A DNA stretch of 64,000 nt from positions 14,322,001-14,386,000 of the forward strand of contig NC_088859.1 of the NCBI RefSeq assembly GCF_963853765.1. The letters are read 5' to 3'. Positions 14,417-35,300 of this stretch are shown one piece after another. Each line of letters opens with the position of its first letter. The stretch's first letter is position 1. The position numbers and the translations under genes are program-made. The notes beneath the pieces were generated by a model. That model saw only the letters and a list, made by a program, of their open reading frames with translations, was not told the origin of the DNA and searched no databases. This DNA is from Magallana gigas. Lineage: Eukaryota.

Positions 14417-16499
14417 CAAACAATGACCACTGTCCCCGTAGTTATAGATCGTCAGAATATAGGTGCATATGTGAGATAAATGTCGAAGAAAGCTAATTTG
14501 TATACATATTTTTTTCTTGCCTTGGGTGAGGCGAGTGTGCATATAATATTTAATATTATCTTCTCTTTTTTTTAATTATTTTTTTTATATTCCGTTCTTT
14601 CCATTCTTGATATCTAAACTAAATAATCATTCGATTATATTAAGAATTAGAATATTTGATAAGATTAAATGAAAATAATTATTTTCATATTCAATTTTAT
14701 AGTCATTCATTAAATCATTTTTTAAAATTGTTTATTCGTTCGTCCCAAAGACATCGACATAGATTTGTTATTCAAAGGAAAGCTCGCAATGTAAAATCGT
14801 GGGATTATTCACAAATCAGGTTCTATAAAAATATATATACGTTTAAACTTCATAATTATATATAAGTGTCGAAATTATTTTCAGGTCCAGAATAATCTAT
14901 TTCGTAATTCATGTCAGCACTAAATTCTGTAATATTTACTATATTTTATTCTTTTTATTTATTTTTTTTTTTTTTGAGGGGGTTTCAGGGGATTTGGCCG
15001 TTTTATAACAGAAATTTAAAACTGAATGTACTTGTTTTAGAATTCCCATTCTTCACATTTGTAGATGTATTAATATGTGCTTCATTTTATAGAATTTTTG
15101 TTCAAACATATTATCACTATAATATTAAGTATTACTTTCTACTTTGTTTTCAGGAAATATCGGCACACAATTGTATATATATGATGTTGATTAGAACAAT
15201 GACAACACCATGTTGAAAGTACTGACCGACAAAGACGAGATCACGGTTGCTGGAGTACTCGGGTGAAATACATGAAAATACTTTTCAAGTATATAAAAGG
15301 ATAGAACAAGCAACATGCCTTCATTTACGAGGTTCAACACTAAACATAGTTCACTAAACATGATACATGCATTGCTATATATCGTTTTAGAAGTTACAGG
15401 TACATGCATCAATAATATAAAAAAAAAATGGCATTTTACATTAAGGATAGAAAAACTACAATAAAAAAATGTAATTGAAAAATTTAAAAAAAACCACACA
15501 CACAAATAAAAAACGACTCGAAAAACACACGCACAAATTGAAAAACTATTTTTAGAAAAATTGAACTGCATCGTTCAAATCCACGGCACAGTCTGCATCG
15601 ATTGGAGAGGATCGTACATATATTGTACCAAATAAATAATGAATTTTATTAAAGAATTATAAGTCATCTTATAATATTAGGATTGCGAATTCTTAACTGT
15701 GATTGGTATGTTTTTCATATTTATACACATAAAAGAGACTGATTTAGTGAAGCATGAAATGGACAGGGTAAAAAAAAAGTGTTTTGTGTCTTCCACACCT
15801 AAAAACACATTTACTACAGTGTCCAATCAACAAGGCGATAAAAATAAATGAAAATAATTTAATCAAGATTAGTTCTGAAACATTTCGTTTGCAATTTAAA
15901 CCACGTCAAATACATGGAAATACTTTCAGCGCTTCGACATGTTTGAAAAACAGACAAATATTTCACGCTGTTTTCTTTTAAGCTTCGATTCCGCTTTCAT
16001 ATCAATATTGTTTTAAAATTTCACAGGTCCTATACAAAAATAATTACTATACCAATGACTGATAATACAAAATCCATACCGTCATTGTGTAACCACACAG
16101 AGTTCGAATAATTGGATTGACATTACAAAGCTTTTGTCCTAAACTCTTCAAATTGTTTTACCTGTAACCACACAATCTAATGGCCATGTACGTAGATATA
16201 GGGGTTGTTATGATCCTGCCCCCGTTCAATTCTATTGACTTGATCTTCAAAGTGACCGGGGGTTTGTTTTTCCTACTAAGTGGTCATAGTTTTCATAATT
16301 GACTTATTCAGTATCCCGCATTTTTATGGGCCTAAAATTTGATGGCGCGGACTTTGTTTATGAGTATTTCATGAATTTCAATTAAAATGGGCTTACATTG
16401 ATTTTTTTCCACTTTGATATATAAGAGAGTTGCTTATGGTCAAAATTTCCAGTTTTGTTCACTGTATCTTTTCGAAATGTCCGAATAAAGTGTTTGAAT

Positions 16500-19400
16500 A
16501 TGATCTGGAAATGTATTTTTATTGTTACCGGGTTGATTTATATACTATCAGTCATCGGCACGTCAGCAGGTAATTCTGTATATATACATATATAACCATA
16601 TTTTATTTTTCAGCGGGAAATGAATTTTTATCAAGTTAGCATAATACTATAAATTTGGTTAATCAAGCCCAGTTTACATTACACCTAGGTATAACATGAA
16701 GCTAAAAACATGACGCTTAGTTGCTTTCCTATTTTGATACTTTATACCATAGTCTTAGACTTACATAAGTAGTGATTCTGTAATATGTCTTTTTTATCAT
16801 TCATATCTTTTTGCTGTATGAAAATGTACCTGTATATATGTATTCTGACGATTTTTTAATATCTTGTATTCTACATATATATGTTCCTCTTGTACCAAAT
16901 TATTTGGTTTGAGCGAATTAACTGAACTGAACTGAATAGAATTTACAGCTAATGTAATACTTTACAGTAATTTTATTTACCACTGAGATATGCAATATTC
17001 ATAAAGATCATTTGGGGGGGGGGGGGGGGGGGGGGCTGGGGCTTTAATCACTTTGATATTCAACCAAAATTCGCTGAAAATAGTTGGAGATGTTTATATT
17101 ATAATAATGACGATAATGATAATAATATTTTAAGCTACTTCAAACTACACCATTTCTGACTGGTCCCCGTGGACGGTATGCATTGATGTACCCGGAACTA
17201 GCAGTAAGCAAGGAGAGAAGACCAGGGTCCGCACGTGCGTGGACGACCTTGGTGACACTGTCGCATGGAGTGAGTGCAACTGCACGTGTTCGAATAACGA
17301 GACCAACGGCTGCAATCTTCCGGGTGAGTTTTATTTCTTTTTGTTTTTTTTTCTCTTTTACTATCGCATGAAATAGAATTATGTAATCAAAATTGGAAAT
17401 ATAATGGTTTATTTTATACTCTTGAAGCGTTAAAATTGACAAATTAAATGATGATATTATAATGTTATTGGTAATTAAACGACAGTTGATGGAGGCTGGG
17501 GGAAATGGGGAGACTGGAAGTGTATAAGCAACACGTTTACACGATTTAGAGCCTGTTCGGACCCACGAGTTGTCATAGTTTTCATAATTGACTTATTCAG
17601 TATCCCGCACTTTTATGGGCCTACAATTTGATGGCGCCGATTTTGTTTATGAGTATTTCATGAATTTCAATTAAAATGGGTTTACGTTGATTTTTTCCCA
17701 CTTTGATTTGAGTTGCTTATGGTCAAAATTTCCTGTTTTGTTCACTGTATCTTTTCGAAATGTCCGAATAAAGTGTTTGAATATGATCTGGAAATGTATT
17801 TGAATTGTTACCGGGTTGATTTATATACTATCAGTCATTGGCACGTCAGCAGGTAATTCTGTATTTATATACATATATAAATATACTAGCGGAAAAAAGA
17901 AACTGTGCATAATGAAATTTAGTATAATTTTTCTACATCTTTTGTTTGTATTTATAAAATTTAAACAATCGATAATGGTAATGTTTTTGACAATATTGGA
18001 TGGTAACCGTCCGGGTGCACGGACTTTTTCATGGTTAGTGAGCACCTGTTGTTTATTGAAGAATTTGTACGCATGAGTTTAACGGGCCAATACTGTTTGG
18101 AATAAGAACTGTAAAGGATTTGTTTAAACTTTTTTTATTAAGGAAATCACTTTAGTTTCAACAAAATTTACGTCTATGTCATGTCATAGATATAAATCTA
18201 TGTCATGCCAAGACTCAACGAAAACCAACGTAATCGTGCTGTTGGGATGCTGCAAGCTGGAATGACACAAAATACTGTAGCAAGACACTTTGGAGTTCAT
18301 CGGAACACCATCCAGTCATTATGGAGACGTTTTCAACAATCTGGCAACACTCAGGATCGACCGCGCTCTGGGCGACCTCGTGTGACGTCACGTCAACAGG
18401 ACAACCACATTAGATTTGTGCATCTGAGAAATTGTTTCCAGACAGCAAGTTTGACTGCCCGTAGCATTCCAGGGCTTCGACCAATTATATTTTTTATAGT
18501 CCAAGAACTTGCGTAATCATCTGTGCGAGCAAAACATCAGACCAAGACGTCCAGCGGTGCGCCCAGTACCGTCATCGTATCGCCAGACTAGCGTGGTGCA
18601 CACGGCATCTGCGATTCAGAATACAGGACTGGGCCAATATTCTGTTCACTGATGAATCCAGATTTCATTTGCATAGCAGTGACGGCCGTTGTAGGGTGTA
18701 TCGTCGCGTTGGGGAGCGTTACCAGGACGCTTGTGTTGTGCAACGTCGACAATTTGGTGAAGGTAGCGTTATGGTGTGGGGTGGAATATCAGCACGTGGA
18801 AGGACCCCTCTACAAATTGTCTATGGAAATCTCACCGGCGTACGCTATCGAGATGAAATTATTCAGCGTCATGTGATACCCTTCATACAGAGACATCAAA
18901 ATCACACCACTCAGCAGCAAGACAACGCAAGGCCACACGTTGCACGTGTAGTCAGGGACTTGTTTGTTCAACAGAATGTCGATGTCTTGCCTTGACCAGC
19001 TGTTTCCCCCGATTTGTCTCCGATCGAGCACGCCTGGGATGAAATGGAAAGACTTTTACGCCGTTTACCAAATCAGCCAGTGACATTGGCTGATTTAGGC
19101 CAGGCTTTAACCAACATCTGGAACAACATCCCTCAAGCATTTCTGAACACTTTAGTGGCATCAATGAGACGTCGCTGTCAAGCATGCGTGAACGCAAATG
19201 TTGGTCACACGCGTTATTAAGTTTGTGAATTCAATTTCAAATAACAGTGACTTTCGAGTGTGCTGAAATTGACGTTATTCGACGTTGACATTAATGTGTT
19301 ATGAGATGTTGTTACGAATACATGTGTTAACAGTATTACAAAAAATAAAATTTGGTCATTGTAATTTTTAAATGTTTTTTTCATATATTATTAAATAATG

Positions 19401-20450
19401 CACAGTTTCTTTTTTCCGATTGTATACATATAACCATTTTTTATTTTTCAGCGGGAAATGAATTTTTATCAAGTTAGCGTAATACTATAAATTTGGTTAA
19501 TTAAGCCCAGTTTACATTACATCTAGGTATAACATGAAGCTAAAAACATGACGCTTAGTTGTTTTCCTATTTTGATACTTTATACCATAGTCTTAGACCT
19601 ACATAAGTAGTGATTCTGTAATATGTCTTTTTTTTTATTCATATCTTTTTGCTGTATGAAAATGTACCTGTGTGTATGTATTCTGACGATTTTTTATTTT
19701 GTGTATTCTATATATATGTTCCTCTTGTACCAAATTATTTGGTTTGAGCGAATTAACTGAACTGAACTGAATAGAATTTACAGCTAATGTAATACTTTAC
19801 AGTAATTTTATTTACCACTGAGATATGCAATATTCATAAAGATCATTTGGGGGGGGGGGGGGGGGGGGCTTAAATCACTTTGTTATTCAACTAAAAAATC
19901 GTTGAAAATAGTTGGAGATGTTAATATTATAATAATGACGATAATAATGATATTTTAAGCTACTTCAAACTACACCATTTCTGACTGGTCCCCGTGGACG
20001 GCATGCATTGATGTACCCGGAACTAGCAGTAAGCGTGGAGAGAAGACCAGGGTCCGCACGTGCGTGGACGACCTTGGTGACACTGTCGCATGGAGTGAGT
20101 GCAACTGCACGTGTTCGAATAACGAAACCAACGGCTGCTATCTTCCGGGTGAGTTTTATTTCTTCTTGTTTTTTTTCTCTTTTACTATCGCATGAAATAG
20201 AAGTATGTAATCAAAATTGGAAATATAATGGTTTATTTTATACTCTTGATGTGTTAAAATTGACAAAATAAATTATGATATTATAACGTTATTGGTGATT
20301 AAACGACAGTTGATGGAAGCTGGGGGAAATGGGGAGACTGGAAGTGTATTAGCAACACGTATACACGATTTAGATCCTGTTCGGACCCACGACCAGCACA
20401 TGGCGGCCAAGACTGTGTGGGAGACTCCCGGGAGGAAGATCAAAGTAAAA

Positions 20451-20483
<33 letters not shown>

Positions 20484-23400
20484 TAAACCAGATATAAAGG
20501 CATTAAACCCTAGCTGATAACTTATTGTAATTGCATATTTTTCGCCTAACCGCAAAAATATGCAAGGACATCGTGGCATGTAACTTCTTTTGTGACGAGC
20601 CATGTTTTGATAAACGAATCTTGTTTGATAATTGTAACAAGCTTCGGAACAATTCAACACTAAAAAAGTACCTACTTTTTTGGTAAAGCAAAATTGTTGC
20701 GGATAATTTGAAACTCTAGAAAAAAGAACACCCTGTTTTTGAGGTAACGGATGAATTTTATCAATATCTTTACAAATATTTTATATTTCAAATCATCCAC
20801 GTTGCCATAGGGGAAAATAAAGATTGCATGTGATCCCGAAACATTTACAGTTAGAAATATTGTTTTATACCTAAACTAGTTTACTACAGAATATCACAAA
20901 TATAGGTATACCTTTACATGTAGTAAAAAACCAACATATGACTTATCAAAAGTGGCCAATAAAGCGTTAAAGGGGCATGGTCACGATTTTGGTCAAATTC
21001 TATTTTTATGTTTTGATTATTTACAATGCTTTAGAAATGCATTTCGAATGATTAAATTAAATTTGAGAGTCATTCGTAGAGTTATAAGCAAGATACAGGG
21101 CTCACAATTCTTTGTCATGTAAACAAGGCTCGTGCCCTGTTTTTGTTTACATAGGTTAAATATACCAGCAAAAATATTTTTCCAGCTTATTTGTCTATCT
21201 TTTTATTTATTTTAAGCATAGATAAACAGTTCCTAATGTTTAACCGATTCGTTTTAGGTTTAAAACTGACATTTTTACTTCAACGTTCAAAATGTAAACA
21301 AACGCTTTGTTTACATAGCGAAGAATTTCAAGCTTTGTAACTCGCTCATAACTTAACAAATGACACTCAAGTTTCGGTTGCCTATTAAAAATGCCTTTCT
21401 GAAGCATCGTAAATATTAAAATCGGAAAAATAATTTTTGACCAAAATCGTGACCATGCCCCTTTAATAACCAAGTTTTCTCATTTAATAGTATAAGTACC
21501 GGTATGATAATAAACTAAAAAACACAATAGTTCAAGAATATACATTGTATGCATAGTTTGAAAACGTTATATTGTGATTTTTTTTTCAAAAAATTATTTG
21601 TATTTATTGGTCTATTGGTCTATGAGAAGCATTTTTTTCGTCTTGGGAATCTTTATAGAATAATATTGTAGTTGTGCCCTGAAAAAAAAAAAATTATTGT
21701 CTTCGATGTATGATACAATGTACATGAAAGTAATTTTGCTGTATTTTTGGATTATAATTGCCATATTTTTTTCTATAAATCCAATAACACAGAACTGTTT
21801 ATGATAAAAATTCGGAATTATCATAATAGCACATATCAAAGTTTAACAGAATTCCAAATTATATGGCTGAAATTACTTTTTAAAGCAATATTTAATATAA
21901 TATATAGAATATATTTACATATGTCAATAATTTGTATGAAGTGAAAACAAACGGAGAGAAGAAATTAAAATCAAATATTCTGATGGATGTTTTATGTCTT
22001 GAAGCTTTATTTCTTGACGGCGGGTGGACGTCATGGACCAATTACAGCGCATGCTCGGTTCCAATGGGTCATGGGACTAAATACCAAACCAGAGAGTGCA
22101 CCAATCCGGAACCTTGCGGAGTGTTAGCGCAGCATTGCGTGGGAGCTAATTCTTCTGGGGCAGATTGTGAAGGTTATTTCATAATTTTAGCTCGATTTAT
22201 TAAAAATCATAAATGATAAATTCTAGGATTATTTTAAAACATATGTCTCACTTATTCAAAGTCATTTCGTTCTAATAACTGTAATCTTGTATGCCCTCTG
22301 GGCCCAAAATTGGAAATAAACTATTATCATTATTATTATCATTATTAGGGTCTTGCGTTTCCAACGGAAGACCCTCTTGTTTTTCTTTGGTTTCTTTTTA
22401 TTATTATTTTATTTATTTTTCTTCTGACTCCTTCTCGGCTTTATATCTCAAAATTTTTTCATCCGATTTCGATGAAATTTTCAGAGCTTTTGTAAAGTTA
22501 CCGTGCCTCTACGATTTCAAGTTTCAGCAATAACGTCACTTCCGTTCAAATTTGGCGGCCGTTTTTAATTTTTTAAAAAGTGATTTTGTCCGGAAGAAAT
22601 CTCCAAAAACTTTAAAGATATCGCTTTGAAATGTTTAATGATGTTAGAATCTATGGTGTACGGGGGGGGGGGGTGTTGTTTAAATTTTATTTATTAATCT
22701 TGCTCAAAACCGGAAGTAGTTCCAATTTTTTGAAATTTTCATTTTTTTTAACAAAATAAGACAATACAACAGTGTTATAGAATTTGCCATAATGATTGTG
22801 AATTCAAATCTGAATTCTGTTTAAAAAACGGGCGATGCATTACAGAGATATGGGGGTTTTAAATCGATTTTTTCGGAAATTTAGCGTAAAGTTCAAAGTA
22901 AAATTAACTTGTACCAAAAATAATTTGATTTTTGTTAAGTCTTACTTTGACACGTTCGGATTTTTTGGTAAATTCGTACTCAGAATCTGGTTTTGTTAAG
23001 ACGTACCAAGAATTAATCGATTTAAAAAATTGTTTAAGTTACCTTTGTTATTGGTTTTAGAACTCTGCTTCATACAGGAACATCTAGCTTTTCGCTCGAC
23101 ATTAATTAACGGAAGACCCACTCGTTGCTTTGCAACGAGCTTTGCTCTAGTTTTTCTTATTATTAGTATACATGCACGTGTGAAAATAAATATGTTTATT
23201 TCGCCAAATTTTATTTTTGCGGATTTTTTTTAAAGTTGTGTTACTCATTATTTTTTGCATATCGCATTTTTTTGTATTTTACTTTTTGCTTCTTACAACT
23301 TTTTTTGATGACGAAACAGTATTTTTGATCTAAGTTTACAAATAGAAATATTTATATGTTTTAATGTCAGAAACTTTTTTCAGAATTCCCGCTATGTCTG

Positions 23401-26400
23401 CAAGGATCAGTGTTCGGGGGCAATTACATGACAAAAGACGACCCACTGGTTCTCTACTCCTCAGCCAACATTGAAGTTTATCCAAGAACCCAAATCACGT
23501 GTTCTCATCTACATGTCATTAGTAATTGGAATTTATACTCAGTTGATGATGAAACAAAAAACGAAACTCACATCTTGAACATAACTCAATCGGCACTGTA
23601 CATCCCTCGAGGGGAGTTCCTGCAAGGCCTGTATCGTCTCTTTGTCTATATGTCCTACACAAAACACTTTGAGTACGGATTTGTGGAGGGTTATATGTAC
23701 TTCCGGATACAGTTGCCGCCTCCCAATGTTTTCATCCAGGGTGGGTCGGGAAGAATGAGCAATCCTGGGACCATTACGGTCGATGCCTGGACCGGGTCGT
23801 ATGATCTAACCAAAGGGCCCGGGCATAGAGACGGCATGGATTACTCGTGGAGCTGTTTTGAGTTTCCGACTAATTCCCTGGACATGCTGATGTCCTTTAT
23901 TGTCCCGGATTACTTTGCGTTCAAGTCCAATGTTACGACATCTCGAATTTCTTGGGATTTTATGAATAGTTTAGTTGATTTGTCAAATAAGTTCTTGGAC
24001 ACGTTTCTCTTAGTGAATCAAGTTTTCTTAAACGAGACGTTCGTTTATCAGCACGTTAACTTAGAAAACATCTCTAGCCCAGATATCTGCTTGCCCTACA
24101 ATGAAACAGGTGGGAATCCTTGCTACCTTGACAATGTAATAAATGCAAAATCATATGCATTATTGCAAGAGTTTCTAAATTCTAGTTTCATTGAGGAAAT
24201 CAAAACTCAACGGTTAAACGCAAAATCAGTTACAACAGATGTCGAGAATGTATTGCCGATGTTGAAATTGGACGAAAATACAACGAGCTCGGATATCGGA
24301 ACAGTAGAGAACGATTTCTTGCCAGCAATGGATGATATGATAAGATACTCACGAATTTTGTCAGAACTATTGCTTAACTTCAACACATTACAGGCCGAAA
24401 CACCAAAAGAGAATTACACCATTTCAACTCTTAAGATCCTCGACGAGCAACTCGCAAAAATAGCAAAACAGGCAAGCAACCTGGCAAACACGAGCTTCCC
24501 AGACTTGATTTTACAGGAGATGCAAATATATGCACTGATTTTCAAAATGTTCGAAAACAATAACTGTGAATCCTTCTCCACAACAAGCCCGGGATACGCC
24601 CAGTTGTATGCCGATCCCGACCATCCCAAGAAAGCCCTGGGATACGTCGTGACAGTCAAAATATCCATTAAAGGAGCTGAGAACACTTACCAACAGAGTA
24701 TACAAGTAGTGTTCCCCAAATCGGACAATGACACTATACCTGAGATAAACTTAGAGTAATTTTTTTAAAGCTATTAGTACTTGGGTAGATATTACAGCTA
24801 TTTAAGCTTTTAGATTTTTAAACAAACTAATCATATCTCCTCGAGTTTGAACATAAATTCTTATACCGATCTATTGAACCTGTAGGCCCATTAAAAGGCA
24901 TATAACGATGTTGTCAAACTACTCCCTTTATGGGCTAAAAATGCATTTCAAAATCAATTTTAAAAATTGAAAGAAGCGAGTACAATGATACACAGACGTA
25001 TATAGATTCAAACCAGTAAATCGGAATTCTGTCTTTCACATCAAGATTTCTTCAGATACCTAGTCGTTGCAAACAGCTACATGTTGTATCTAATATTTAG
25101 AACCATTTTAACAAGAGCTTGGACTTTGGGTGGTTGTTTTAAACTGCAATGATGTGTCGTAGGCCTGTCTATTTCATTGCTTGCTACGCAGCCATGGCTC
25201 TTTGAAATCGACACAATTTGTCTGGCTTTTGAGCTAAAACTACACAACTGGGTATATTTCACTTGATACCAGCGTCATTTTAAATTTGTTTTGACGCAAG
25301 AAAAAATAGTTACATCCTACCGAAAGTCCAGGGTCTTGTTAAAATGATTCTTATTAAATTCTATACAGTAGCTTTGAGTTGTCGGATTGATTCAGATGTC
25401 ACGTGACGGGGAGAAGAAGACGTCGTTTCTCGTTTATAACCCCTTCAAATCTTAATAATTCGGTTCGTTTCGACCGTGATTATTTCTTGTTTGTTCGAAT
25501 CTATATGCACTGTTTCTTTTTTCATAATTTAAGCATTAAACGCTCATTTTAGCGCGGTTTTCAATTTGTCTGCACATCCTTCGTGTTTTTAAAGACCGAA
25601 GACATCCAAAACTAAGCATTTAAAGCTTGCATTTATATTCAAATTGACGTTTATCTAATTTAAGTATTTGTGAATAGCAATATTTCACATTTTTTGCATG
25701 ATTGTGAGGGAAATATGAAGATTTATTCCCCGATGAAAAAATCATATTTCCCGAGGGCAACGCCCGAGGGAAATATGATTTTTTTGGGGGGGGGGGGATA
25801 AATCTTCATATTTCCCGAACGTTCATGAAATAAATTGTTTATTATACCGAACGACAGATGATAATTTAGAATACATCAGTTTCCTATCGTTTTTCAATTC
25901 TAGTAAAGCAATAACGTGGTAAATGTTTACCGTTTTCTTTCTCTTACAGTTTCTGAAATAATAAGGATTTAAAACTAAATAGAATTAATGATTTAATTGC
26001 ATCGAATGCTCATCCTAGGGATTTTCTATAAGCATGGAATGAAAACTCGAAGGGGTGAAATATGCTGAAAAATATGACGATGACAGCGAAATATGAAGTT
26101 TTATTGCCCTGGCCCGTGATTGTCTAGAACCAATCAGATGTCGCGTTATGTAGAATAATCATATTAAGGTATAATAATACACATTTGGTAGTTCGCTTAC
26201 GCGACTTCAAATTAAGTGCCAGAAATTTTATCGAGAAAATTTTTTTGTTATCAATGAATAAAGATAATTTAACGATTATTTTTCGTTAGTAAATATCAAG
26301 TTTGAACGTTTCATTTAATCTGACAAAAATATATTAAAAAAACGCAATTACTTTTACATCTGTGACCATGCACCGTGACAAGGCTAAGTGTGTTTACAGG

Positions 26401-29253
26401 GTTTTGAAATTGGCAGATTTCCAATGCAAACAAGAAGGGAAACATACACTGAATGCAGACATACATGTACTCACTAATTTGAAGATCCATACTTAATATT
26501 TGCATTTAGAAATGTGTGTGATTCCCTGAGGAATATAAGCAATTTTAATCCCCATTGAATAGTCATGACGTCCAAATATTATAGTTGCAGTAATTGTTAT
26601 CGTAAACAAAGTACCGGTATTGCATACCCCCCCCCCCCTCCTTCGAATACAGTTAAATTCTGCATTGTTTTTAATACCAAAGATAGACCAAACTGTCGGA
26701 CAGAGAAGCATCGGTGTTTTACAGGTTGAACAAGTCATCTCAACGAACATGTCAGCTAATTTTTCTCTTTCTTCAGGTGCTATTTGAATTGCAAGCCGAG
26801 AGTCGCAACCTCCTTGATGATGTCAATCCGAGTGAAATGTACGACTTGCTCAAGAGACGACGAAAAAAGAGCCGTCTACAAATGGAATCTGGTGGAGTAT
26901 GACCCAGCAACAAAAGCCACCAGAGCCATCAACGAATGGGAGAATTGGTTAGAAACAGGTCAGCTATTCCTCTTGATTTTTCACAAAAATGTTGCTTGTT
27001 TGGCTCTTGATGTAAACAATTGTTGTTGGGTTTTTTCTCGGTTAAGGAATTCAATACGAGGGTATACGTCAGTTTTTTGGTTTTGTGTATTTATCTTATA
27101 TTGTGTATTTACGTATCTACACAATTGTATAAATTTATGCTAATTTAGACATGTTAATGTTATACAATTATCTACTGAGACCAAAGCTGGATATTGTTGT
27201 TCCTTGAGCAACGCGGCTTATTTTGGTGTGAGGAAAGGTTTGTCGTATAAAGTCATTCATTGTCGGAAACCTACGATGATAACGCGTCGTTCCTTTCTCC
27301 ATCACCGGGTGAAGGAGAATGGAACACCGCGTAATTAACCGTACGTGGGTTTCTGACGATCAAACTTCAAAGTCATCAGGATTCAATTAAGCTTATATGT
27401 TTTACTAGCATTTTAAGATAACCTTTTGATGGTATTTGCCAATTGGTAATGACATAAGAAATACGGTGTCACGTTTTACTGGTGTTGTCTTATTTCTCGA
27501 AAATAAGATGTTCGCAAGATATGTGCGATTGCTTTTTAAACAAAGAATACCAAATAAAGATGCGAGTACTATAAGAGCATTGGATGGTCATGGCCAAGAA
27601 TGCTACATTATTCTCGTGCAAAGGAGAACTTTCTTAGAACCATTTTAACAAGACCTAGAACTTTCATTAGGACTTAACAATCTATTTCTTTCTTCAAAAT
27701 AAGTTAAAATGATGCTGATTTCGAGTGAAAAAAATGCATAGATTACGTTGTTTTAGCTCAAAAGCCTGATAAATATTGTTGATTTCAAGGAGCCATGGCT
27801 GAGTGGCCAGCAATGAAAAACACAGTCCTGCGTCACATTGCCGTTTGACACAACTACCCAAAGCCCAAGCTCGTGATAAATTGTCTCTATTCATTGACCC
27901 TAAGCACAAAATTCTCTCTTTCCTTCACTGCAGATCCCTCTGAACCCAAATTTGTCGTGAAGGCCAATTCCTTTCGCGGGCTGTCGTATTACCTTCTTAC
28001 GGTTAAGATGAATGTCTCGAACAGTTGGTCAGAAATGCAAATGATCTTGGAGACAACGAATCCCCCTTATGGAGGATTATGCGGAGTTACGGAAGTAACA
28101 AAATCAGGTAAGTTTTGTGATCTCGTGGAGTAAGCTAACTGGAATAAACACCATTGTCATTGGACTCTGGTCAATATCCCCTTGAAGTATTACTCTACAA
28201 TATCCGAAAATATCATTAGACGATTAAATGGAAAAAAAACATTTTTTTTATAAAGCCATTATTTTTTTTCCATTAAAAAAACAAAACAAGAAAAAACATC
28301 AATTGAGATAAACGGCGTAAAAGAACTTGTTTTTCAACATTGCATTTATTGCTATATTTACATGAATCAGAGNNNNNNNNNNNNNNNNNNNNNNNNNNNN
28401 NNNNNNNNNNNNNNNNNNNNNNNNNNNNNNNNNNNNNNNNNNNNNNNNNNNNNNNNNNNNNNNNNNNNNNNNNNNNNNNNNNNNNNNNNNNNNNNNNNNN
28501 NNNNTGTAGAACTTCGTTTTGCTTCAGGTCAGGTTGATTTAGAACTGAGGGGGTGGAAAGACGAGGGATTTAGAAGACAGCAGAATGTGGAGTTAGATTG
28601 GAAGGAACAGATAAGTTACCGCATATTTCAAGAGGACTCGCAAACTAAAGAGAAATCACTCGTGTACGAAGGCTGTAAGTCATCATAGTAAAGTGGAGTA
28701 ATTCAGTGTTTCAGACATTTTAGAAGCAAATAAAGAGAAATCGGTGTTGCACAAAATGTTTACTTATATAAGGAGAACCTTCCACAACTTGTATTACGTA
28801 GCTTTCACACAAGAATACTAAGTATCCCCCTTATATCAAGACAGAAAATATTACAGCTCAAAAAGCTTATTATTTGCTCAAGAATAAACATATCTTTTCC
28901 ATATTGTTAAACTAAGAAGGGTCCTTGATTACTGTTAATGTGCATTGCAAAACCAAAAAAATATTTTTAATATCTTAAAATTTTTTTTTTTCAAAACAGA
29001 TGAACGAATTATAAGTGGATTGTACTTTAATTACGGATATAAAGAAGACAAGTCGTTTATAACTATTTACGCTGAAGTCCTCGATGTCTTTGGCGATTTT
29101 ACCACCTGTAACATTGCACCATTTCAGGTGAAGTTTTGATATACATGTTCTACCATGTTGTCTTTTTTTTTTAATTACTGAATGTTATGTGGATCTGTTC
29201 GTTTTATTATTTGATTTTATCCTTATCAGCCTCCTCCAATGAAAAATAATTAT

Positions 29254-29322
<69 letters not shown>

Positions 29323-32300
29323 ACCAATGTCTGTATACTCTTCAGATATTTTCGCCGATGAAGGACACCTCGGTAGACGACTTTCTGGTGAATTCCCAGG
29401 AGATGATAGAAACTGCGATCGAACAGTCCAACACCGGCCTCGTATCCATGACACTAGAAACAACCATTAGTACCTCAAACCGGGAGGTATGTACACGCCG
29501 TTTGATGAATCTAGTTACTGTATACAGGGAAATATTCGTCCTTTTCGCCCTGGTTGTGAGCCCGCGAATTTAAAACTGGGCGAATATCAATGTCTCAAAC
29601 TATTTTCCTAAAACAAAACTGTGTCTGGGCGAATTAAGGACTGGGCTAACTGTTTCAAAGTTCAGAATGGCGAAAATTACCCTGTGTACAGTATTAATTT
29701 AAGCCGTGTGTTTAATTTGATTTGATTAAAAAAAAGTTTAGTAAAGGACACACAAAAATGCTCATCCTGAGTGGAATGAATAAGAAAGGTTTCAAACATT
29801 GTGTAGACAAAAAAAGTTTATTTTTAATTTTTTATACTATTTCCTCAAATAAAACTTTACGGAACGCAACCCCCTTTTTTCAGGAACTTCCCGAGACTAG
29901 TTTCATTGATGAGTTGATTGAAAACCCGGAAACCTGGAGCAGTATTGGGGAGGCAACCACGTTTGAAAACCTCTTCCAAAACTTGATGGTTACAGATCAA
30001 AATTACACAAATCAAGAGATTCTAAAAGAGGTATGTATTTACAACCGGAAATCATCAATACATGAATAGAAGTACACGTAATTATAAATGTATAGCTCTT
30101 CAATTACAAAAAAAATAAGTAGTAAGTCTGAACCAAATAAAACAGTGGATTTAAAATATACTCTTTTCATTAAAAGAAAGTTGTAGAAACTGCGTATGTA
30201 TGTATACTATACATTTTAAATTTTGAATGTAATGAGTTTCTTTGGCAATTAAAAATAAAAGCAAGAAGCGAATCTTAGCTACTCAGGGAAGAAATTGTTT
30301 CTGCAATATCGTCTCGATGCTTTGACGTGCAGTCATCATTGGAAAATCACAAATGCAACTACGCTTCCAAAATGGTTCATTCTTAGTCCCTGAACATAGT
30401 TCATAAACTTTTGACATTTATAATATCTACTCGTTCGTCAAAAGATAAAATGGGTGAAGTATGATAATGGCGACGGCCCGTTTAATTAACAGGGAATGCA
30501 GAATATGACTGCCTATCTGAAAACGTCGACAACTTCTCTGAAAATTGACAACACGGTCTTACAACGACAGATGGCGTTTTGTTCGGGGTCTTCCATGGAA
30601 ATCAAACAACTAGTCACACAGGAGGCTATGGTAATATAATAGTCCTTATTCTAACCACGATATCAAAGAAGTATGTATCACATAAATAAAATTTGTTGAT
30701 TTCTTGCTCAAGGTTTCGGCTCTGAGTTCCACCAATGACGTCATCGAGAACTTCATCAACACGTCAATTAAAGCTAACTTCCCCGTCTACGAGGACTATC
30801 TGTCAACTTCAGAGGGTGGGCGGCAATTTGACGTTTCGTTTAAAAATCTGTTTTCAGAAACAAAATTATGAAATTATCATCGAAAATTAAAATACCTAAC
30901 ATTAAATGGATATCTGTTGTAGCCATCTTGCGTTCGGTGGACAATATGCTCAACATTTTGATACCAAAGTTAAGTCCTGATATTCCGGAAACAAACGACA
31001 TCTACAAAATAGCGGACCAGTATAGCTCTGAAGACACAATTAATGCTTATGATGGATTGGGATTTTCGCCACAGGAGAGGGCACTATTTGTGTCAATGTC
31101 TATTGATGCGTACCAAGAAAGTGTTAACTCTTCCCTTGAAATGGTAATGTAAAGTTACGGGATGGAATGACAAACGGTTGAACAGATTCTAATAAAATAT
31201 GAACCAATTTGTATATAGGGGTCTAGAAAAAATAATTAAGCCGATTACAAATCAAAAAGTTTTATACATTTCGGTATTTATTTCATTATAGCAGTAAAAT
31301 CAATGTAAATTATATGCTGGCTTTTGGCATTATCATTTAAATGTAGGCAAACCAAACGGTGCCGAATGTTCAGAAGTCTATTCTGGAACTTGGAACGGTA
31401 TTAAAAGAGATCACACATAGGAAGCAATTTGAAGTTGAGGTGACAAGACCGGGATTAAAGACAAGCATGGAGAAAGTGCAGGTGGACCAAGAAATCGATA
31501 GGAAAAACCTGAAAATTAAGTTTGATCTGAACACCGAACTGGAAGAAGATTTACAGGTAAACACAGATTTTTGTCTTTAAACTATTTACTATGTAGATCA
31601 TAATTTGCAAAAACAGTACTCACTCAAGTAAATAATGTTTGTTTAAGGTTACGCAATATTCCAAAACTCCGTTTATTTGGGATCCGGAAGCTAAATATAT
31701 AGAGTCACCAACGGTCCACATTGCACTGGGAAATAGAACGTCACTTCCGTCTGTAAAAACAAAATTCAGTGTGTCCTCTTCGGTGACCAAACGACAAATT
31801 GTGTTAGATTTTCCAGACGATACAGACGAGTATGTTTCCCGGTCATTCGCCTACAAGATTTGGTGGAAGAATCCGGCCGATAATTTGGTCTTCAGTTTTG
31901 AACGTGACAACAGTACTCTCGATTCATTTTCGCACGTCGTTTACGCAAAAAAGGATAGCACTCCGACTAGTTTGGATCACGAGTGGACAAAAATCATCAC
32001 ACAGAGCGACTGGATTGATGGGGGCGCTTCTTGTCTTCTTCCGAAAAACTTTTGTTCGAAGCCATGTCTGATGTTTTTTGCTGTTCATGTTACATTTAGT
32101 AAGAACTATCTACTAGTATTGTAAATTCATAAAATAAGTTTTTGAAAAATTTTAATATTTATTTTTGAAAAATCAACAAAGTTAATATTTCAATATTTTG
32201 TATAATGTAAATAAATTGAAACTTATCTATAAATACTCTTTAATGAAAGTGTTGTTTAAAAGTTCATCACGTTTTTATTTAAAAACATTTTTTTTTATTT

Positions 32301-35300
32301 AACCTTCTTCAGTTCCAAAATCAGGACATAGTAGAAAACGTCGTTCCGTTTCGAATAGTACCGTCACTTACAGCACGTCGAATATTACCGTCACTAACAG
32401 CACGTCATCTGTAAGTTATGACGTCAGCGGATGGACGACAGGTTGTCGAGTATGGGATGGGCAACAATGGGACAAAACTTCTTGCCAGGTTCTACTCTCT
32501 ACTATTGATATATCGTTTTATTCCATACAGCGCTCCAATGAAACCACAATCAATGTGTTCCGTAGTTATACCAGAATTTGTAAATAAAAAGTTTTCCACA
32601 GTGGAATCAAACAAGACGAGATAATCTAGATCTTTTCTTTATACAGGTATCCCCGGAGACAAATAACAGAGAAACTGTTTGTGATTGTCAAAATCCCCCA
32701 GGGGATAACTTCGCAACGTCGTTCTTCGTTCCACCGAACTCGATCGATTTTTCGACGGTTTTCGAGAAATTCGACATCATTGGGAACGGAGCGGTGTTCG
32801 GCACAGTGACGGCCATTATAGTGTTGTACGTCATTGGTCTGTTGGTGGGTCGACGTTACGACAAGAAGGATCGAGAAAAGGTATCAAATTTTGTTTCTAC
32901 TATAAGGTTTAAGGATGCATTGGTGTATTGTTTTCATACCACGGTGTTCGAGTGTTTCACATATAATGATTTGGCCTGTCTCTCCGGTTCCATCTAAACT
33001 GAAGAAGGGTTTTTTTTCCAAAAGTTCAAGGCCATTAATTAAAAGTACCATGACGGTTAGGTCTGGAACTTGGCTAAATGGCCTTTACAAGTAAATTTTG
33101 AACATATCCCCTTATGATCTGTGAGTAATTTCAAAGTGAATTATAGTTTCTTCTACTGAAATCGGCCACTCTCTGCATGATAAAATAAATCATTTTTTTA
33201 TGTTTTTTAATTAATATTATTTTAGTTTTAATTTAAATTATAGTATCATATATCATTTATCACCAATGGTGAGATGTAAAACATTTCTGACTGTGTTTAC
33301 TCTAGTGGAAGCTGTTTTACATGAGTGATAACTTGAAGACGGACAAGCACGTGTACCTGGTCACCGTCTTCACCGGTCTGTCCAGGAACTCCGGCACCAC
33401 GAGTAACGTTAGCTTCGTCATCGCCAGTCTCCTCAAAGACACCGGAGTCCGTCATCTCACCGACGGAGTCAAAAAGGTACCACCTCTTACGCCATCTCGA
33501 CAACCAATTAAATCTTTACAATAAGCGCATTAAAAATATATTTTACTACAATTGAGCAGGATTTCAATTTCTGCGCAAGGTTACACGTATATTTCTTAGC
33601 AGGATTTTATTTGCAATACACATGTATATTTTTTTTACATCGCGCAGGGTTTCGAGACAGGAAGTGTCTTCACTTACGTCATGACCGTTCAGGATTCCCT
33701 TGGTGACCTGACTTTTCTGAACATCTGGCACGACAACAGCGGGAAGGGAGGAGACGCCTCGTGGAATCTAATCAAAGTTGTCGTAGAAGACGCACACACG
33801 GGGAAAAGGTGTGTTACAAGGAACTTCCTGTTGAGAAATATATGTAGAGTAGATTGACGCGTTTAAAATAATCAGATAGCGTTGACGTCAATAAATTCTG
33901 CAATTTGCAAAACCATTGCCATTACATGTAGCAAATACAGATATAAAACGCATAATTTAATCTGATAGAACGAGTCTTTGACGATGCATACTTCGGGTAA
34001 AAATTTGATATGGTTGTACATGTTATAAGAAGTCAAATTGTCGCTTTGCAATTACAGTATCAGATATCTCTAAACTTCATCATCGGTAAACTCATGTATT
34101 GTACTATAAATCAGAATTTATTAATGGAGTGTGAATAACAATTTAAGTTTCTCTTTTGTGCAGATTTGTATTTTTCTGTAACCAGTGGTTGAGTCTGGAT
34201 TCACACGAAAGCTCCATACAGTGCACAGTTCCCGTGGCAACCTCCGAATCTCTCCAGACTTTTAATTTCAACTTTAATGAAAACACTCGAGAAAACGTCA
34301 CCGACAGCCATTTATGGTTATCCATGTTCATAAGACCTGAAAAAAGCACCTTCACACGCTGTGAACGTCTTTCATGCTGCGTGACTCTACTTTTCTTAAC
34401 AATGATTTCTAATGCCATGTTCTACGGAAAAGACGAAGCGATAGAGCAAATTCGCGTCGGTCCTATCAAATTTGCTCTATCCTCTATTTACATATCATTT
34501 GTTGGAATTATCATGACATTCCCTATTGTTCTAACAATATCAATGATATTCAAAAAGTCAAAATGGCAAAAGGAAGCTGAAGACAGAGACAAAGACAGAG
34601 AAAACGTCGAATCCTTTTTGACACAGAAGAAAGAAATGAAGTTTCGAATGCCACCCAAATGCTTATACGTCGCATACGTCCTTGTTGTTCTGTCCATCCT
34701 GCTGTCTGGGTTTTTCGTGGTTCTGTACAGTATGGAGTGGGGAAAAGCTAAATCTGAGGAATGGCTGAAAACTTTTTTCATGTCTTTTCTGGAATCGTTG
34801 TTTATTGTTGATCCAATCAAGGTTTGTTTTGATGATCCTTTCGTTTTCTTTCCATATTAACGTTTAAAGGGTTGTGAGGTCATGCCAAAATTTTATTATT
34901 TAAAAACTATCTGGAAAAGAAGACCTCTAGGTTATAATACTAACAAATTTTCAAATAAGACTACATATTAAAAGAGTAAATTGTGAATACATAAAAATAG
35001 TTTCCAAGTTTATTTGACAATTGATTTATTTGTTTGACTATGCAGCCTCTTTCAATTAAGTATTGAATACATGTATAATATTCCTCAAATTAACCGAAAG
35101 CTCGGAAACCACATGCAAATTTTGTTGTAGGTTATAGCAGTTGCTGTGTTCTTGTCCATCATTACCAAAAAATCTCTTGATGACAGTAAATACGAGACAA
35201 CGAAGCTATTGGAACAATCCCAGACCAGGGCACTGGCATTTGCTCGAGACACTAAAAGTTTGTTTGCGTATTTAAAGAATTACTTACCTACAATACTGTC

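What the first reader, a model, noticed from the sequence alone, without database searches (positions are those of the whole stretch)
16283..20444. Split polycystin 5' end: tandem copies with complementary lesions, so only cross-copy splicing gives full-length receptor
Seen: copy 1 has an intact signal exon (16500-16569) and exon A, but exon B is cut at 17568. Copy 2 has TGA in its signal exon (17801-17803) and a Tc1 in intron 1, but intact exons A and B leading into an otherwise open ~2400-codon gene. All these exons are phase 1, so S1-A1-B2, S1-A2-B2 and S1-A1-A2-B2 are in frame. Inference: duplication-degeneration-complementation occurring inside one gene, caught at an early stage. Caveat: oysters are highly heterozygous, so two haplotypes could have been assembled in tandem.
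Basis: partly seen in the sequence, partly recalled or inferred. Interest (0 to 1): 0.85.

Follow-up and report, generated by a model that had tools for sequence, protein, structure and literature searches.

The report
Duplicated start of oyster polycystin gene
The first 1.3 kb of an oyster polycystin-1-like receptor gene is present twice in tandem, and only the upstream copy keeps a usable start, so a full-length protein needs splicing across the two copies; this is an ordinary partial gene duplication, and I could not test whether it is real rather than an assembly error, or whether the cross-copy splicing happens.

Summary
Window 16279-17568 is repeated at 17568-20393: 1270 aligned nt, 96.0% identity, 8 small indels. 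A dead 1541-bp Tc1 element (17884-19424) interrupts copy 2. Each unit carries 221 bp of upstream sequence, a signal exon, a 189-nt TSP1-like exon A and the start of TSP1-like exon B. S2 has TGA at codon 7, and B1 ends at the duplication junction. All exons are phase 1.

The gene is a polycystin-1-like gene (REJ, Polycystin_dom, PKD_channel). It is collinear with its Crassostrea virginica ortholog with no frameshift. dN/dS is 0.07 in the TM and channel exons.

New here: the syntenic C. virginica locus has one S and one B, so the duplication is specific to this lineage, or is an artefact. C. virginica also has two diverged in-frame A-type exons (S-A-A'-B), so an S1-A1-A2-B2 protein is architecturally plausible.

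The intact B1 acceptor should often yield a 367-nt stop-containing exon (17486-17852). No transcript or read evidence could be obtained.

"Degeneration-complementation" overstates the case, because B1's cut is the duplication breakpoint, not later decay. The haplotype-artefact rival stays at about 0.3.

The parts
16279..17568 (+). Copy 1 of the tandem duplication (1290 bp): 221 bp of upstream sequence, S1, intron, A1, intron, truncated B1
   Evidence: the repeat finder, alignment, global alignment statistics. The left flank is collinear with C. virginica L003 2986-3063.
16418..16425 (+). TATATAAG, a TATA-box-like motif 82 nt upstream of the S1 ATG. It is absent from copy 2 because of a 6-bp length difference.
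   Evidence: Alignment columns 219-226. The three-way alignment with C. virginica shows TTTAAAAAG at the same place there. A promoter role is inferred, not shown.
16500..16569 (+). S1: intact first coding exon (ATG plus signal-peptide-like 23 codons and 1 nt), donor CAG|GTAATT
   Evidence: Homologous to the C. virginica start exon at L003 3249-3312.
17135..17323 (+). A1: 189-nt phase 1-1 TSP1-like exon (WSPW motif)
   Evidence: Pfam TSP1_CFP_C hit at E=0.002, below the curated cut-off. 95% amino-acid identity to A2 and 45-47% to C. virginica A and A'.
17486..17568 (+). B1: first 83 nt of exon B. The acceptor is intact, and homology ends at the duplication junction, so the normal donor is missing.
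17486..17852 (+). Predicted composite 'poison' exon (367 nt) bounded by the B1 acceptor and the S2 donor. It has an in-frame stop at 17630-17632, and its length is not a multiple of 3.
   Evidence: Translation of S1-A1-[17486-17852]-A2. Use of this exon is inferred from the splice-site sequences only.
17568..20393 (+). Copy 2 of the duplication, interrupted by the Tc1 element and contiguous with the rest of the gene
   Evidence: The right boundary lies inside exon B2, which is collinear with C. virginica exon B (L003 6086-6220).
17783..17852 (+). S2: dead copy of the signal exon, with TGA at 17801-17803 (codon 7)
17884..19424 (+). Degenerate Tc1/mariner element in intron 1 of copy 2 (TA target duplication, about 28-nt inverted ends, transposase in at least 3 pieces)
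   Evidence: Inverted repeat I2, Pfam HTH and DDE_3 hits, boundaries and frames.
19960..20148 (+). A2: intact 189-nt TSP1-like exon. It keeps the Y in GCYLP seen in C. virginica A' and Mytilus, where A1 has N.
20310..20444 (+). B2: intact 135-nt TSP1-like exon
   Evidence: Pfam TSP_1 at E=0.012, below the cut-off. 60% amino-acid identity to C. virginica exon B.
22005..22172 (+). Exon C: third TSP1-like module, 168 nt, phase 1-1
   Evidence: Pfam TSP_1 at E=0.0013. Conserved in C. virginica at L003 7553-7663.
23384..37553 (+). Rest of the polycystin-1-like gene. It runs from the REJ exon (23384-24755) to the last exon (35910-37553, Polycystin_dom plus PKD_channel), with about 19 further exons in between.
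   Evidence: Pfam. 19 collinear tblastn HSPs with C. virginica P0054 and no frameshift. The splice join 24755/26777 is conserved. dN/dS is 0.07 for the TM and channel exons.

Best explanation
This is a lineage-specific head-to-tail duplication of 1.29 kb at the 5' end of a polycystin-1-like (PKD1L2/PKDREJ-type) receptor-channel gene. The duplicated unit ran from 221 bp upstream of the ATG into exon B.

At birth, the downstream copy was the complete gene. The upstream copy was a promoter-S-A-B' fragment transcribed into it.

Since then the downstream start has been disabled. There is a TGA at codon 7 of S2, copy 2 has no TATA-like motif where copy 1 has one, and a now-dead Tc1 element has landed in its first intron. 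On this haplotype, a full-length signal-peptide-bearing receptor can therefore only be translated from S1.

The simplest productive mRNA skips the 367-nt composite exon formed by the B1 acceptor and the S2 donor. That gives S1-A1-A2-B2-C-REJ..., a protein with one extra TSP1-like module, the same architecture that C. virginica has. S1-A1-B2 and S1-A2-B2 are also in frame.

Because the B1 acceptor is intact and lies closest to the A1 donor, a sizeable share of transcripts is expected to include the stop-containing exon and be non-productive.

Shown: the anatomy, the reading frames, the derived state relative to C. virginica, and the integrity and long-term constraint of the downstream gene.

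Inferred: that the junction exists in the animal, that promoter 1 is used, and which splice forms are made.
For: - Repeat structure and lesions.
- It is the only such duplication in the window, and there are no N bases at the junction. False duplications are most often separated by gaps (PMC9516828).
- The syntenic C. virginica locus L003 has a single S and a single B. It is collinear with the copy 1 left flank and with B2.
- C. virginica has two in-frame 189-nt A-type exons, and its annotated 708-aa model equals S+A+A'+B+C+REJ. Mytilus P0057 has S-A-B-C-REJ.
- All module exons are phase 1-1.
- The downstream gene is open and collinear with P0054 over 1790 aa. dN/dS is 0.07.
Against: - There is no read, depth or second-assembly evidence for the 17568/17569 junction.
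- 4% divergence plus small indels is within the range of allelic differences in oysters. Heterozygosity is 2.6-2.9% genome-wide (PMC10546077). A Hi-C contig, apparently from the same species (98.3% identical), differs from the window by 1.7% within the REJ exon.
- The unit contains a Tc1 present/absent difference. This is the kind of heterozygous insertion at which contigs break.
- No transcript was found. The protein collections hold no model of this gene from this species.
- Coding and non-coding divergence between the copies are alike (3.5% against 4.2%), so neither copy of A shows constraint.
Confidence: 0.5

Rival explanations
1. Assembly artefact. Two haplotypes of a single-copy 5' end were laid down in tandem. 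One is an intact allele without Tc1. The other is a null allele with TGA and a Tc1 insertion. The animal would then have one S-A-B unit per chromosome, and no cross-copy splicing would be needed or possible.
For: - Copy divergence (4.0% plus 8 small indels) is comparable with oyster heterozygosity of 2.6-2.9% (PMC10546077). It is also comparable with the 1.7% exon difference seen in an independent Hi-C contig.
- A heterozygous Tc1 insertion lies inside the unit and could have caused a contig break.
- The outgroup is single copy.
- Heterotype false duplications are the main class of duplication error (PMC9516828).
Against: - There is no gap or N at the junction, and the junction is clean. False duplications are most often separated by gaps.
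- The unit is only 1.3 kb (2.8 kb with Tc1). That is shorter than a long read, so a single read would span it.
- There is no other duplication of this kind in the 64-kb window.
Confidence: 0.3
2. The duplication is real, but this haplotype is simply a loss-of-function allele, or the gene is beginning to pseudogenise. Promoter 1 transcripts splice A1 to B1 and run into the stop at 17630, giving nonsense-mediated decay or a roughly 134-aa secreted S1-A1-B1' fragment. Promoter 2 transcripts hit the TGA. No full-length receptor is made.
For: - The B1 acceptor is identical to B2's apart from 1 nt at position -13. It is the nearest acceptor to the A1 donor, across a 162-nt intron.
- The composite exon has a normal acceptor and a normal donor.
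- Differences between the copies, and between the alleles in the REJ exon, are mostly non-synonymous.
Against: - The remaining roughly 2400 codons show no stop or frameshift in the parts checked against the ortholog.
- At about 2% divergence per copy lineage, an unconstrained 7-kb coding sequence would be expected to have acquired several. This is my own rough estimate.
- It implies loss would have to be very recent.
- Long-term dN/dS is 0.07.
Confidence: 0.2

Closest known systems
Tandem exon or module duplication of phase 1-1 extracellular modules (classical exon shuffling; tandemly duplicated exons as a source of extra domains or alternative splicing). This is from general knowledge and was not checked in a paper here.
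   Same: A, B and C are symmetrical phase 1-1 exons, each encoding one TSP1-like module. Duplicating A keeps the frame. C. virginica already carries two A-type exons in the same gene.
   Different: The duplicated segment is not a single exon. It comprises the promoter-proximal region, the first exon, exon A and part of exon B. It therefore also creates a second, now dead, start and a truncated exon that can act as a poison exon.
Partial (5') tandem gene duplication with promoter and first-exon redundancy
   Same: An upstream promoter-S-A-B' fragment sits head-to-tail in front of a complete gene. One of the two redundant starts has decayed.
   Different: Usually the truncated upstream fragment is the copy that decays. 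Here the start of the complete downstream copy carries the nonsense codon, so function, if retained, has shifted to the fragment's start.
Duplication-degeneration-complementation (Force et al. 1999 model; from general knowledge)
   Same: Two duplicates, and neither can produce the full product alone.
   Different: Copy 1's defect is the duplication breakpoint, not a later degenerative mutation. No ancestral subfunctions are partitioned. The two copies remain one transcription unit.
Heterotype false duplication in assemblies of heterozygous genomes (PMC9516828)
   Same: Adjacent copies a few per cent apart, with an insertion/deletion difference, in a highly heterozygous species.
   Different: There is no assembly gap between the copies, and the unit is very short. 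Read depth could not be examined.
Polycystin-1-like proteins with a channel domain (PKD1L2, PKDREJ, sea-urchin REJ type)
   Same: REJ, Polycystin_dom and PKD_channel domains. The ortholog P0054 is named polycystin-1-like protein 2 and carries PLAT. The extracellular part evolves fast and the channel part slowly.
   Different: The N-terminus is made of three to four TSP1-like modules. The state of the GPS site was not examined here.

Membership tests
Polycystin-1-like (PKD1L2/PKDREJ-type) receptor-channel | REJ domain in the ectodomain | tested here: met
   PF02010 at E=1.2e-8, 34.4 bits against a cut-off of 25, on 23365-24756.
Polycystin-1-like (PKD1L2/PKDREJ-type) receptor-channel | Polycystin domain plus polycystin cation-channel domain at the C-terminus | tested here: met
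   PF20519 at 1.4e-40 and PF08016 at 1.7e-38 on 35910-37550.
Polycystin-1-like (PKD1L2/PKDREJ-type) receptor-channel | PLAT/LH2 domain after the first transmembrane helix | tested here: inconclusive
   Not scanned directly. The window exons 33306-33815 align at 81-84% to the part of P0054 whose record lists PF01477.
Polycystin-1-like (PKD1L2/PKDREJ-type) receptor-channel | GPS autoproteolysis site before the first transmembrane helix | not tested
   The region 32288-32491 aligns poorly (41%) and is shorter than in C. virginica. Another first-stage note claims the motif is lost. I did not examine this.
Genuine tandem segmental duplication | Two head-to-tail copies with one junction and single-copy flanks | tested here: met
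Genuine tandem segmental duplication | Single copy in an outgroup (derived state) | tested here: met
   C. virginica L003 has one S and one B, with flanks collinear to the window.
Genuine tandem segmental duplication | Reads spanning the junction and normal read depth on both copies | not testable with these tools
   No read data or second assembly of the species could be reached. The exact-ORF look-ups and the DNA scan were blank.
Duplication-degeneration-complementation | Each copy lost a different ancestral subfunction through mutation after the duplication | tested here: not met
   B1's truncation coincides with the duplication boundary. Only copy 2 shows later lesions: the TGA and the Tc1. 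The 6-bp difference at the TATA-like motif cannot be polarised.
Duplication-degeneration-complementation | Both copies are required for the full function | tested here: inconclusive
   S1 and B2 are both required for an open frame. A1 is dispensable, since S1-A2-B2 is in frame. There are no expression data.
Tc1/mariner transposon | TA target-site duplication and terminal inverted repeats | tested here: met
   TA on both sides and inverted ends matching at 25 of 28 positions.
Tc1/mariner transposon | DDE transposase with an N-terminal HTH domain | tested here: inconclusive
   HTH_28 at 2.8e-7 is above its cut-off. DDE_3 at E=9e-4 is below its cut-off. The ORF is broken by at least one frameshift and a TGA.
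Thrombospondin type 1 repeat (exons A, B, C) | Match to a TSP1 profile above the curated threshold | tested here: not met
   Best hits are TSP1_CFP_C at 19 bits against 27, and TSP_1 at 16-19 bits against 21.6. The W-x-x-W motif and the cysteine pattern are visible by eye, hence 'TSP1-like'.

The most novel reading that the evidence does not exclude
The duplication is real, and promoter 1 transcripts skip the B1-S2 composite exon. This oyster's receptor would then have just gained a second A-type TSP1-like module (S1-A1-A2-B2) by a route that also moved its promoter and start codon 1.3 kb upstream. It would parallel the older A/A' pair in C. virginica. That would make it a caught-in-the-act intermediate of module gain in a fast-evolving, possibly gamete-recognition, polycystin, with a built-in poison exon that sets the level of productive mRNA.
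Probability: 0.3. Interest if true: 0.5.

Novelty: new member of a known kind. Interest (0 to 1): 0.33.

Why it matters
If real and expressed, this is a clean, datable example of how a modular extracellular receptor gains a domain through a partial 5' tandem duplication. It would also show how the start of a gene can move to the upstream copy while the original start decays.

The C. virginica comparison suggests that this has happened more than once in the same gene.

It also matters for annotation. Automatic pipelines will either call a truncated gene or miss the start here, and the C. virginica record already splits the ortholog into two models.

If it is a haplotype artefact, the lesson is only a cautionary one about kilobase-scale duplications in oyster assemblies.

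Tried and rejected
- **Full-library HMMER search with the REJ exon.** This returned only exon-sized ORFs from Logan contigs and distant bivalve models. No protein model of this gene from this species was found.
- **Word search with the 100-aa antisense ORF over A1.** No hit.
- **Contigs for P0002 and P0001.** They are 1-3 kb long and do not reach the duplication. L001 turned out to be a Hi-C ligation chimera.
- **JGI metagenome scan for a 33-mer of exon A.** Nothing found.
- **Exact look-ups.** I looked up the junction-spanning 36-aa ORF and the 76-aa ORF over B2. Neither is on record.
- **Saccostrea cucullata ortholog locus L004.** The model starts at exon C, and no S, A or B homolog is recognisable in the 8.5 kb upstream. 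It is uninformative.
- **Search of papers for the run accession.** Nothing found.
- **Rescue of S2 by another ATG.** Rejected. The only other ATG (17794) is out of frame with A2.
- **A cryptic donor at 17569|17570.** This would make an in-frame 84-nt B1 exon, but the site (CGA|GTTGTC) is very poor.
- **The AATAAA at 17767-17772 as a polyadenylation site for a mini-transcript.** The same hexamer sits 11 nt before the S1 ATG in the normal 5' UTR, so it is not obviously a functional signal.
Full report
**1. Observation**

The window holds a head-to-tail direct repeat. Copy 1 is 16279-17568. Copy 2 is 17568-17874 plus 19428-20393. A global alignment gives 1270 aligned nt, 51 mismatches (96.0% identity) and 8 small indels. 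A self-comparison of the whole window finds no other duplication of this kind. The only N run (28373-28504) is far from the junction.

Copy 2 is interrupted at 17884-19424 by a 1541-bp Tc1/mariner element. It has a TA target duplication and inverted ends of about 28 nt. Its transposase is split by at least one frameshift and a TGA.

Each unit carries the following parts:
- 221 bp of upstream sequence.
- A 70-nt first coding exon with a signal-peptide-like sequence (S1 16500-16569, S2 17783-17852).
- A 189-nt exon A (A1 17135-17323, A2 19960-20148).
- The start of exon B (B1 from 17486, B2 20310-20444).

S2 has TGA at 17801-17803. B1 loses homology at 17568/17569, which is the duplication junction. 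All splice sites are the same in both copies, and all exons are phase 1. S1-A1-B2, S1-A2-B2 and S1-A1-A2-B2 are open, whereas S2-A2-B2 is not.

**2. The gene**

Pfam finds REJ in the 23365-24756 exon, and Polycystin_dom plus PKD_channel in the last exon, 35910-37550. Exons A, B and C (22005-22172) give only sub-threshold TSP1 hits. They show the W-x-x-W and cysteine pattern, and all are phase 1-1.

The closest annotated relative is P0054, "polycystin-1-like protein 2" of Crassostrea virginica. Its 1790 residues are covered by 19 collinear tblastn HSPs from 26820 to 37523, at about 72% identity and with no frameshift. The N run falls in an intron. The join between the REJ exon (donor GA|GTAATT at 24755) and the next exon (26777) is conserved in C. 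virginica.

dN/dS against C. virginica is 0.07 for the TM and channel exons. The REJ exon is much more diverged, at 58% amino-acid identity. The gene has therefore been a constrained, functional gene over the long term, with a fast-evolving ectodomain.

**3. Outgroup comparison, the main new evidence**

The C. virginica locus L003 is syntenic with the window across the whole gene and the neighbouring HECT ligase gene. In L003, the sequence homologous to the copy 1 left flank runs without a break into the promoter-proximal region and a single start exon, 3249-3312. A single exon B (6086-6220) is collinear with B2 across the right boundary of the duplication. The 1.29-kb duplication is therefore absent from C. 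virginica. It is either a derived feature of the window's lineage or an artefact.

C. virginica does have two diverged A-type exons in tandem, A at 5447-5635 and A' at 5796-5984. Both are 189 nt and phase 1-1, and each is 45-47% identical to the window's A. The annotated 708-aa model equals S+A+A'+B+C+REJ exon by length arithmetic. Mytilus P0057 shows S-A-B-C-REJ with one A. A receptor with two A modules is therefore an existing architecture in this gene family.

The Saccostrea cucullata locus was uninformative.

**4. How it most likely works**

At birth, the downstream copy was the complete gene and the upstream copy was a promoter-S-A-B' fragment. B1's truncation is the breakpoint, not later decay. 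The later lesions are in copy 2: the TGA and the Tc1 insertion. Copy 2 also has no TATA-like motif where copy 1 has TATATAAG (16418-16425) and C. virginica has TTTAAAAAG. The direction of that 6-bp change is ambiguous.

No other in-frame ATG exists in S2, A2 or B2. As assembled, a full-length protein with a signal peptide must therefore start at S1.

The B1 acceptor is identical to B2's except for one base and lies only 162 nt after the A1 donor. Together with the S2 donor it defines a 367-nt exon (17486-17852) with a stop at 17630-17632. I therefore expect a mixture of two forms:
- Non-productive transcripts that include this exon.
- Productive transcripts that skip it, giving S1-A1-A2-B2.

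This is inference from sequence only.

**5. Is the duplication real?**

I could not test this. The protein collections hold no model of this gene from this species. The look-ups and DNA scan aimed at the junction were blank.

Arguments for an artefact:
- Oyster heterozygosity is 2.6-2.9% (PMC10546077).
- A Hi-C-derived contig, apparently from the same species (98.3% identical), differs from the window by 1.7% inside the REJ exon, mostly at non-synonymous sites.
- The unit contains a Tc1 present/absent difference of the kind that breaks contigs.

Arguments against an artefact:
- There is no gap at the junction, whereas false duplications are most often separated by gaps (PMC9516828).
- The unit is shorter than a long read.
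- It is the only such case in 64 kb.

I put the artefact at about 0.3.

**6. Comparison with known kinds and verdict**

This is a partial 5' tandem duplication of a modular gene. It is related to tandem exon duplication and exon shuffling of phase 1-1 modules.

The duplication-degeneration-complementation label does not fit. One of the two "lesions" is the breakpoint itself, no subfunctions are partitioned, and A1 is dispensable.

The finding is a well-described, plausible example of a known evolutionary process, with a useful outgroup parallel. It lacks the two pieces of evidence that would make it notable: reads across the junction, and mRNA joining S1 to A2 or B2. Interest is moderate to low.

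An earlier first-stage note on the same stretch (s1-361707) proposed the S1-A1-B1 read-through mini-protein. I confirm the open frame, about 134 aa ending at 17630-17632, but I regard it as a by-product.

Noticed in passing
L003:3249-21781 (C. virginica GCA_053477285.1, CM130320.1): The C. virginica ortholog is annotated as two genes, of 708 aa and 1790 aa. The 708-aa model ends by reading through the conserved GA|GT donor of the REJ exon. The next exon is homologous from 46 nt upstream of the second model's ATG. The split therefore looks like an annotation error.
   Followed up: partly
L003:5447-5984: C. virginica has two diverged 189-nt A-type TSP1-like exons in tandem (A and A'). The window species has only one type, with a 162-nt A-B intron and no room for an A'. 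Either C. virginica gained A' or this lineage lost it.
   Followed up: partly
L001:1-987 (Logan SRR10801759) against window 23405-23806: Only the middle 402 bp match the window, at 98.3%. The match is bounded on both sides by GATCGATC, the signature of a DpnII/MboI Hi-C ligation junction. The contig is therefore a Hi-C chimera. 5 of its 7 differences from the window are non-synonymous.
   Followed up: partly
window 32288-32491: The region before the first transmembrane helix (the GPS area) aligns at only 41% to C. virginica and is about 34 residues shorter. Another first-stage note (s1-361723) claims the GPS motif is lost.
   Followed up: no
window 51747-52542: A tandem array with a period of about 72 nt, copies 84-89% alike.
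   Followed up: no
window 58141-58409; L003 28322-30254 and L003 4114-5249, 12710-12892: A roughly 180-nt unit present once or twice in the window occurs as a long tandem array and as scattered copies in the C. virginica locus. This suggests a satellite or MITE-like repeat shared by both oysters.
   Followed up: no
window 1148-1322 and 63627-63798: A 175-nt inverted pair at 96.6% identity, 62 kb apart. These are probably two copies of a short mobile element.
   Followed up: no
window 39543-45626: The downstream neighbour is a C2-WW-HECT ubiquitin ligase gene. By synteny with L003, where it is on the minus strand, it is also on the minus strand here. Its exons are 78-95% identical to C. virginica at the DNA level, far more conserved than the polycystin exons (70-80%).
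   Followed up: no
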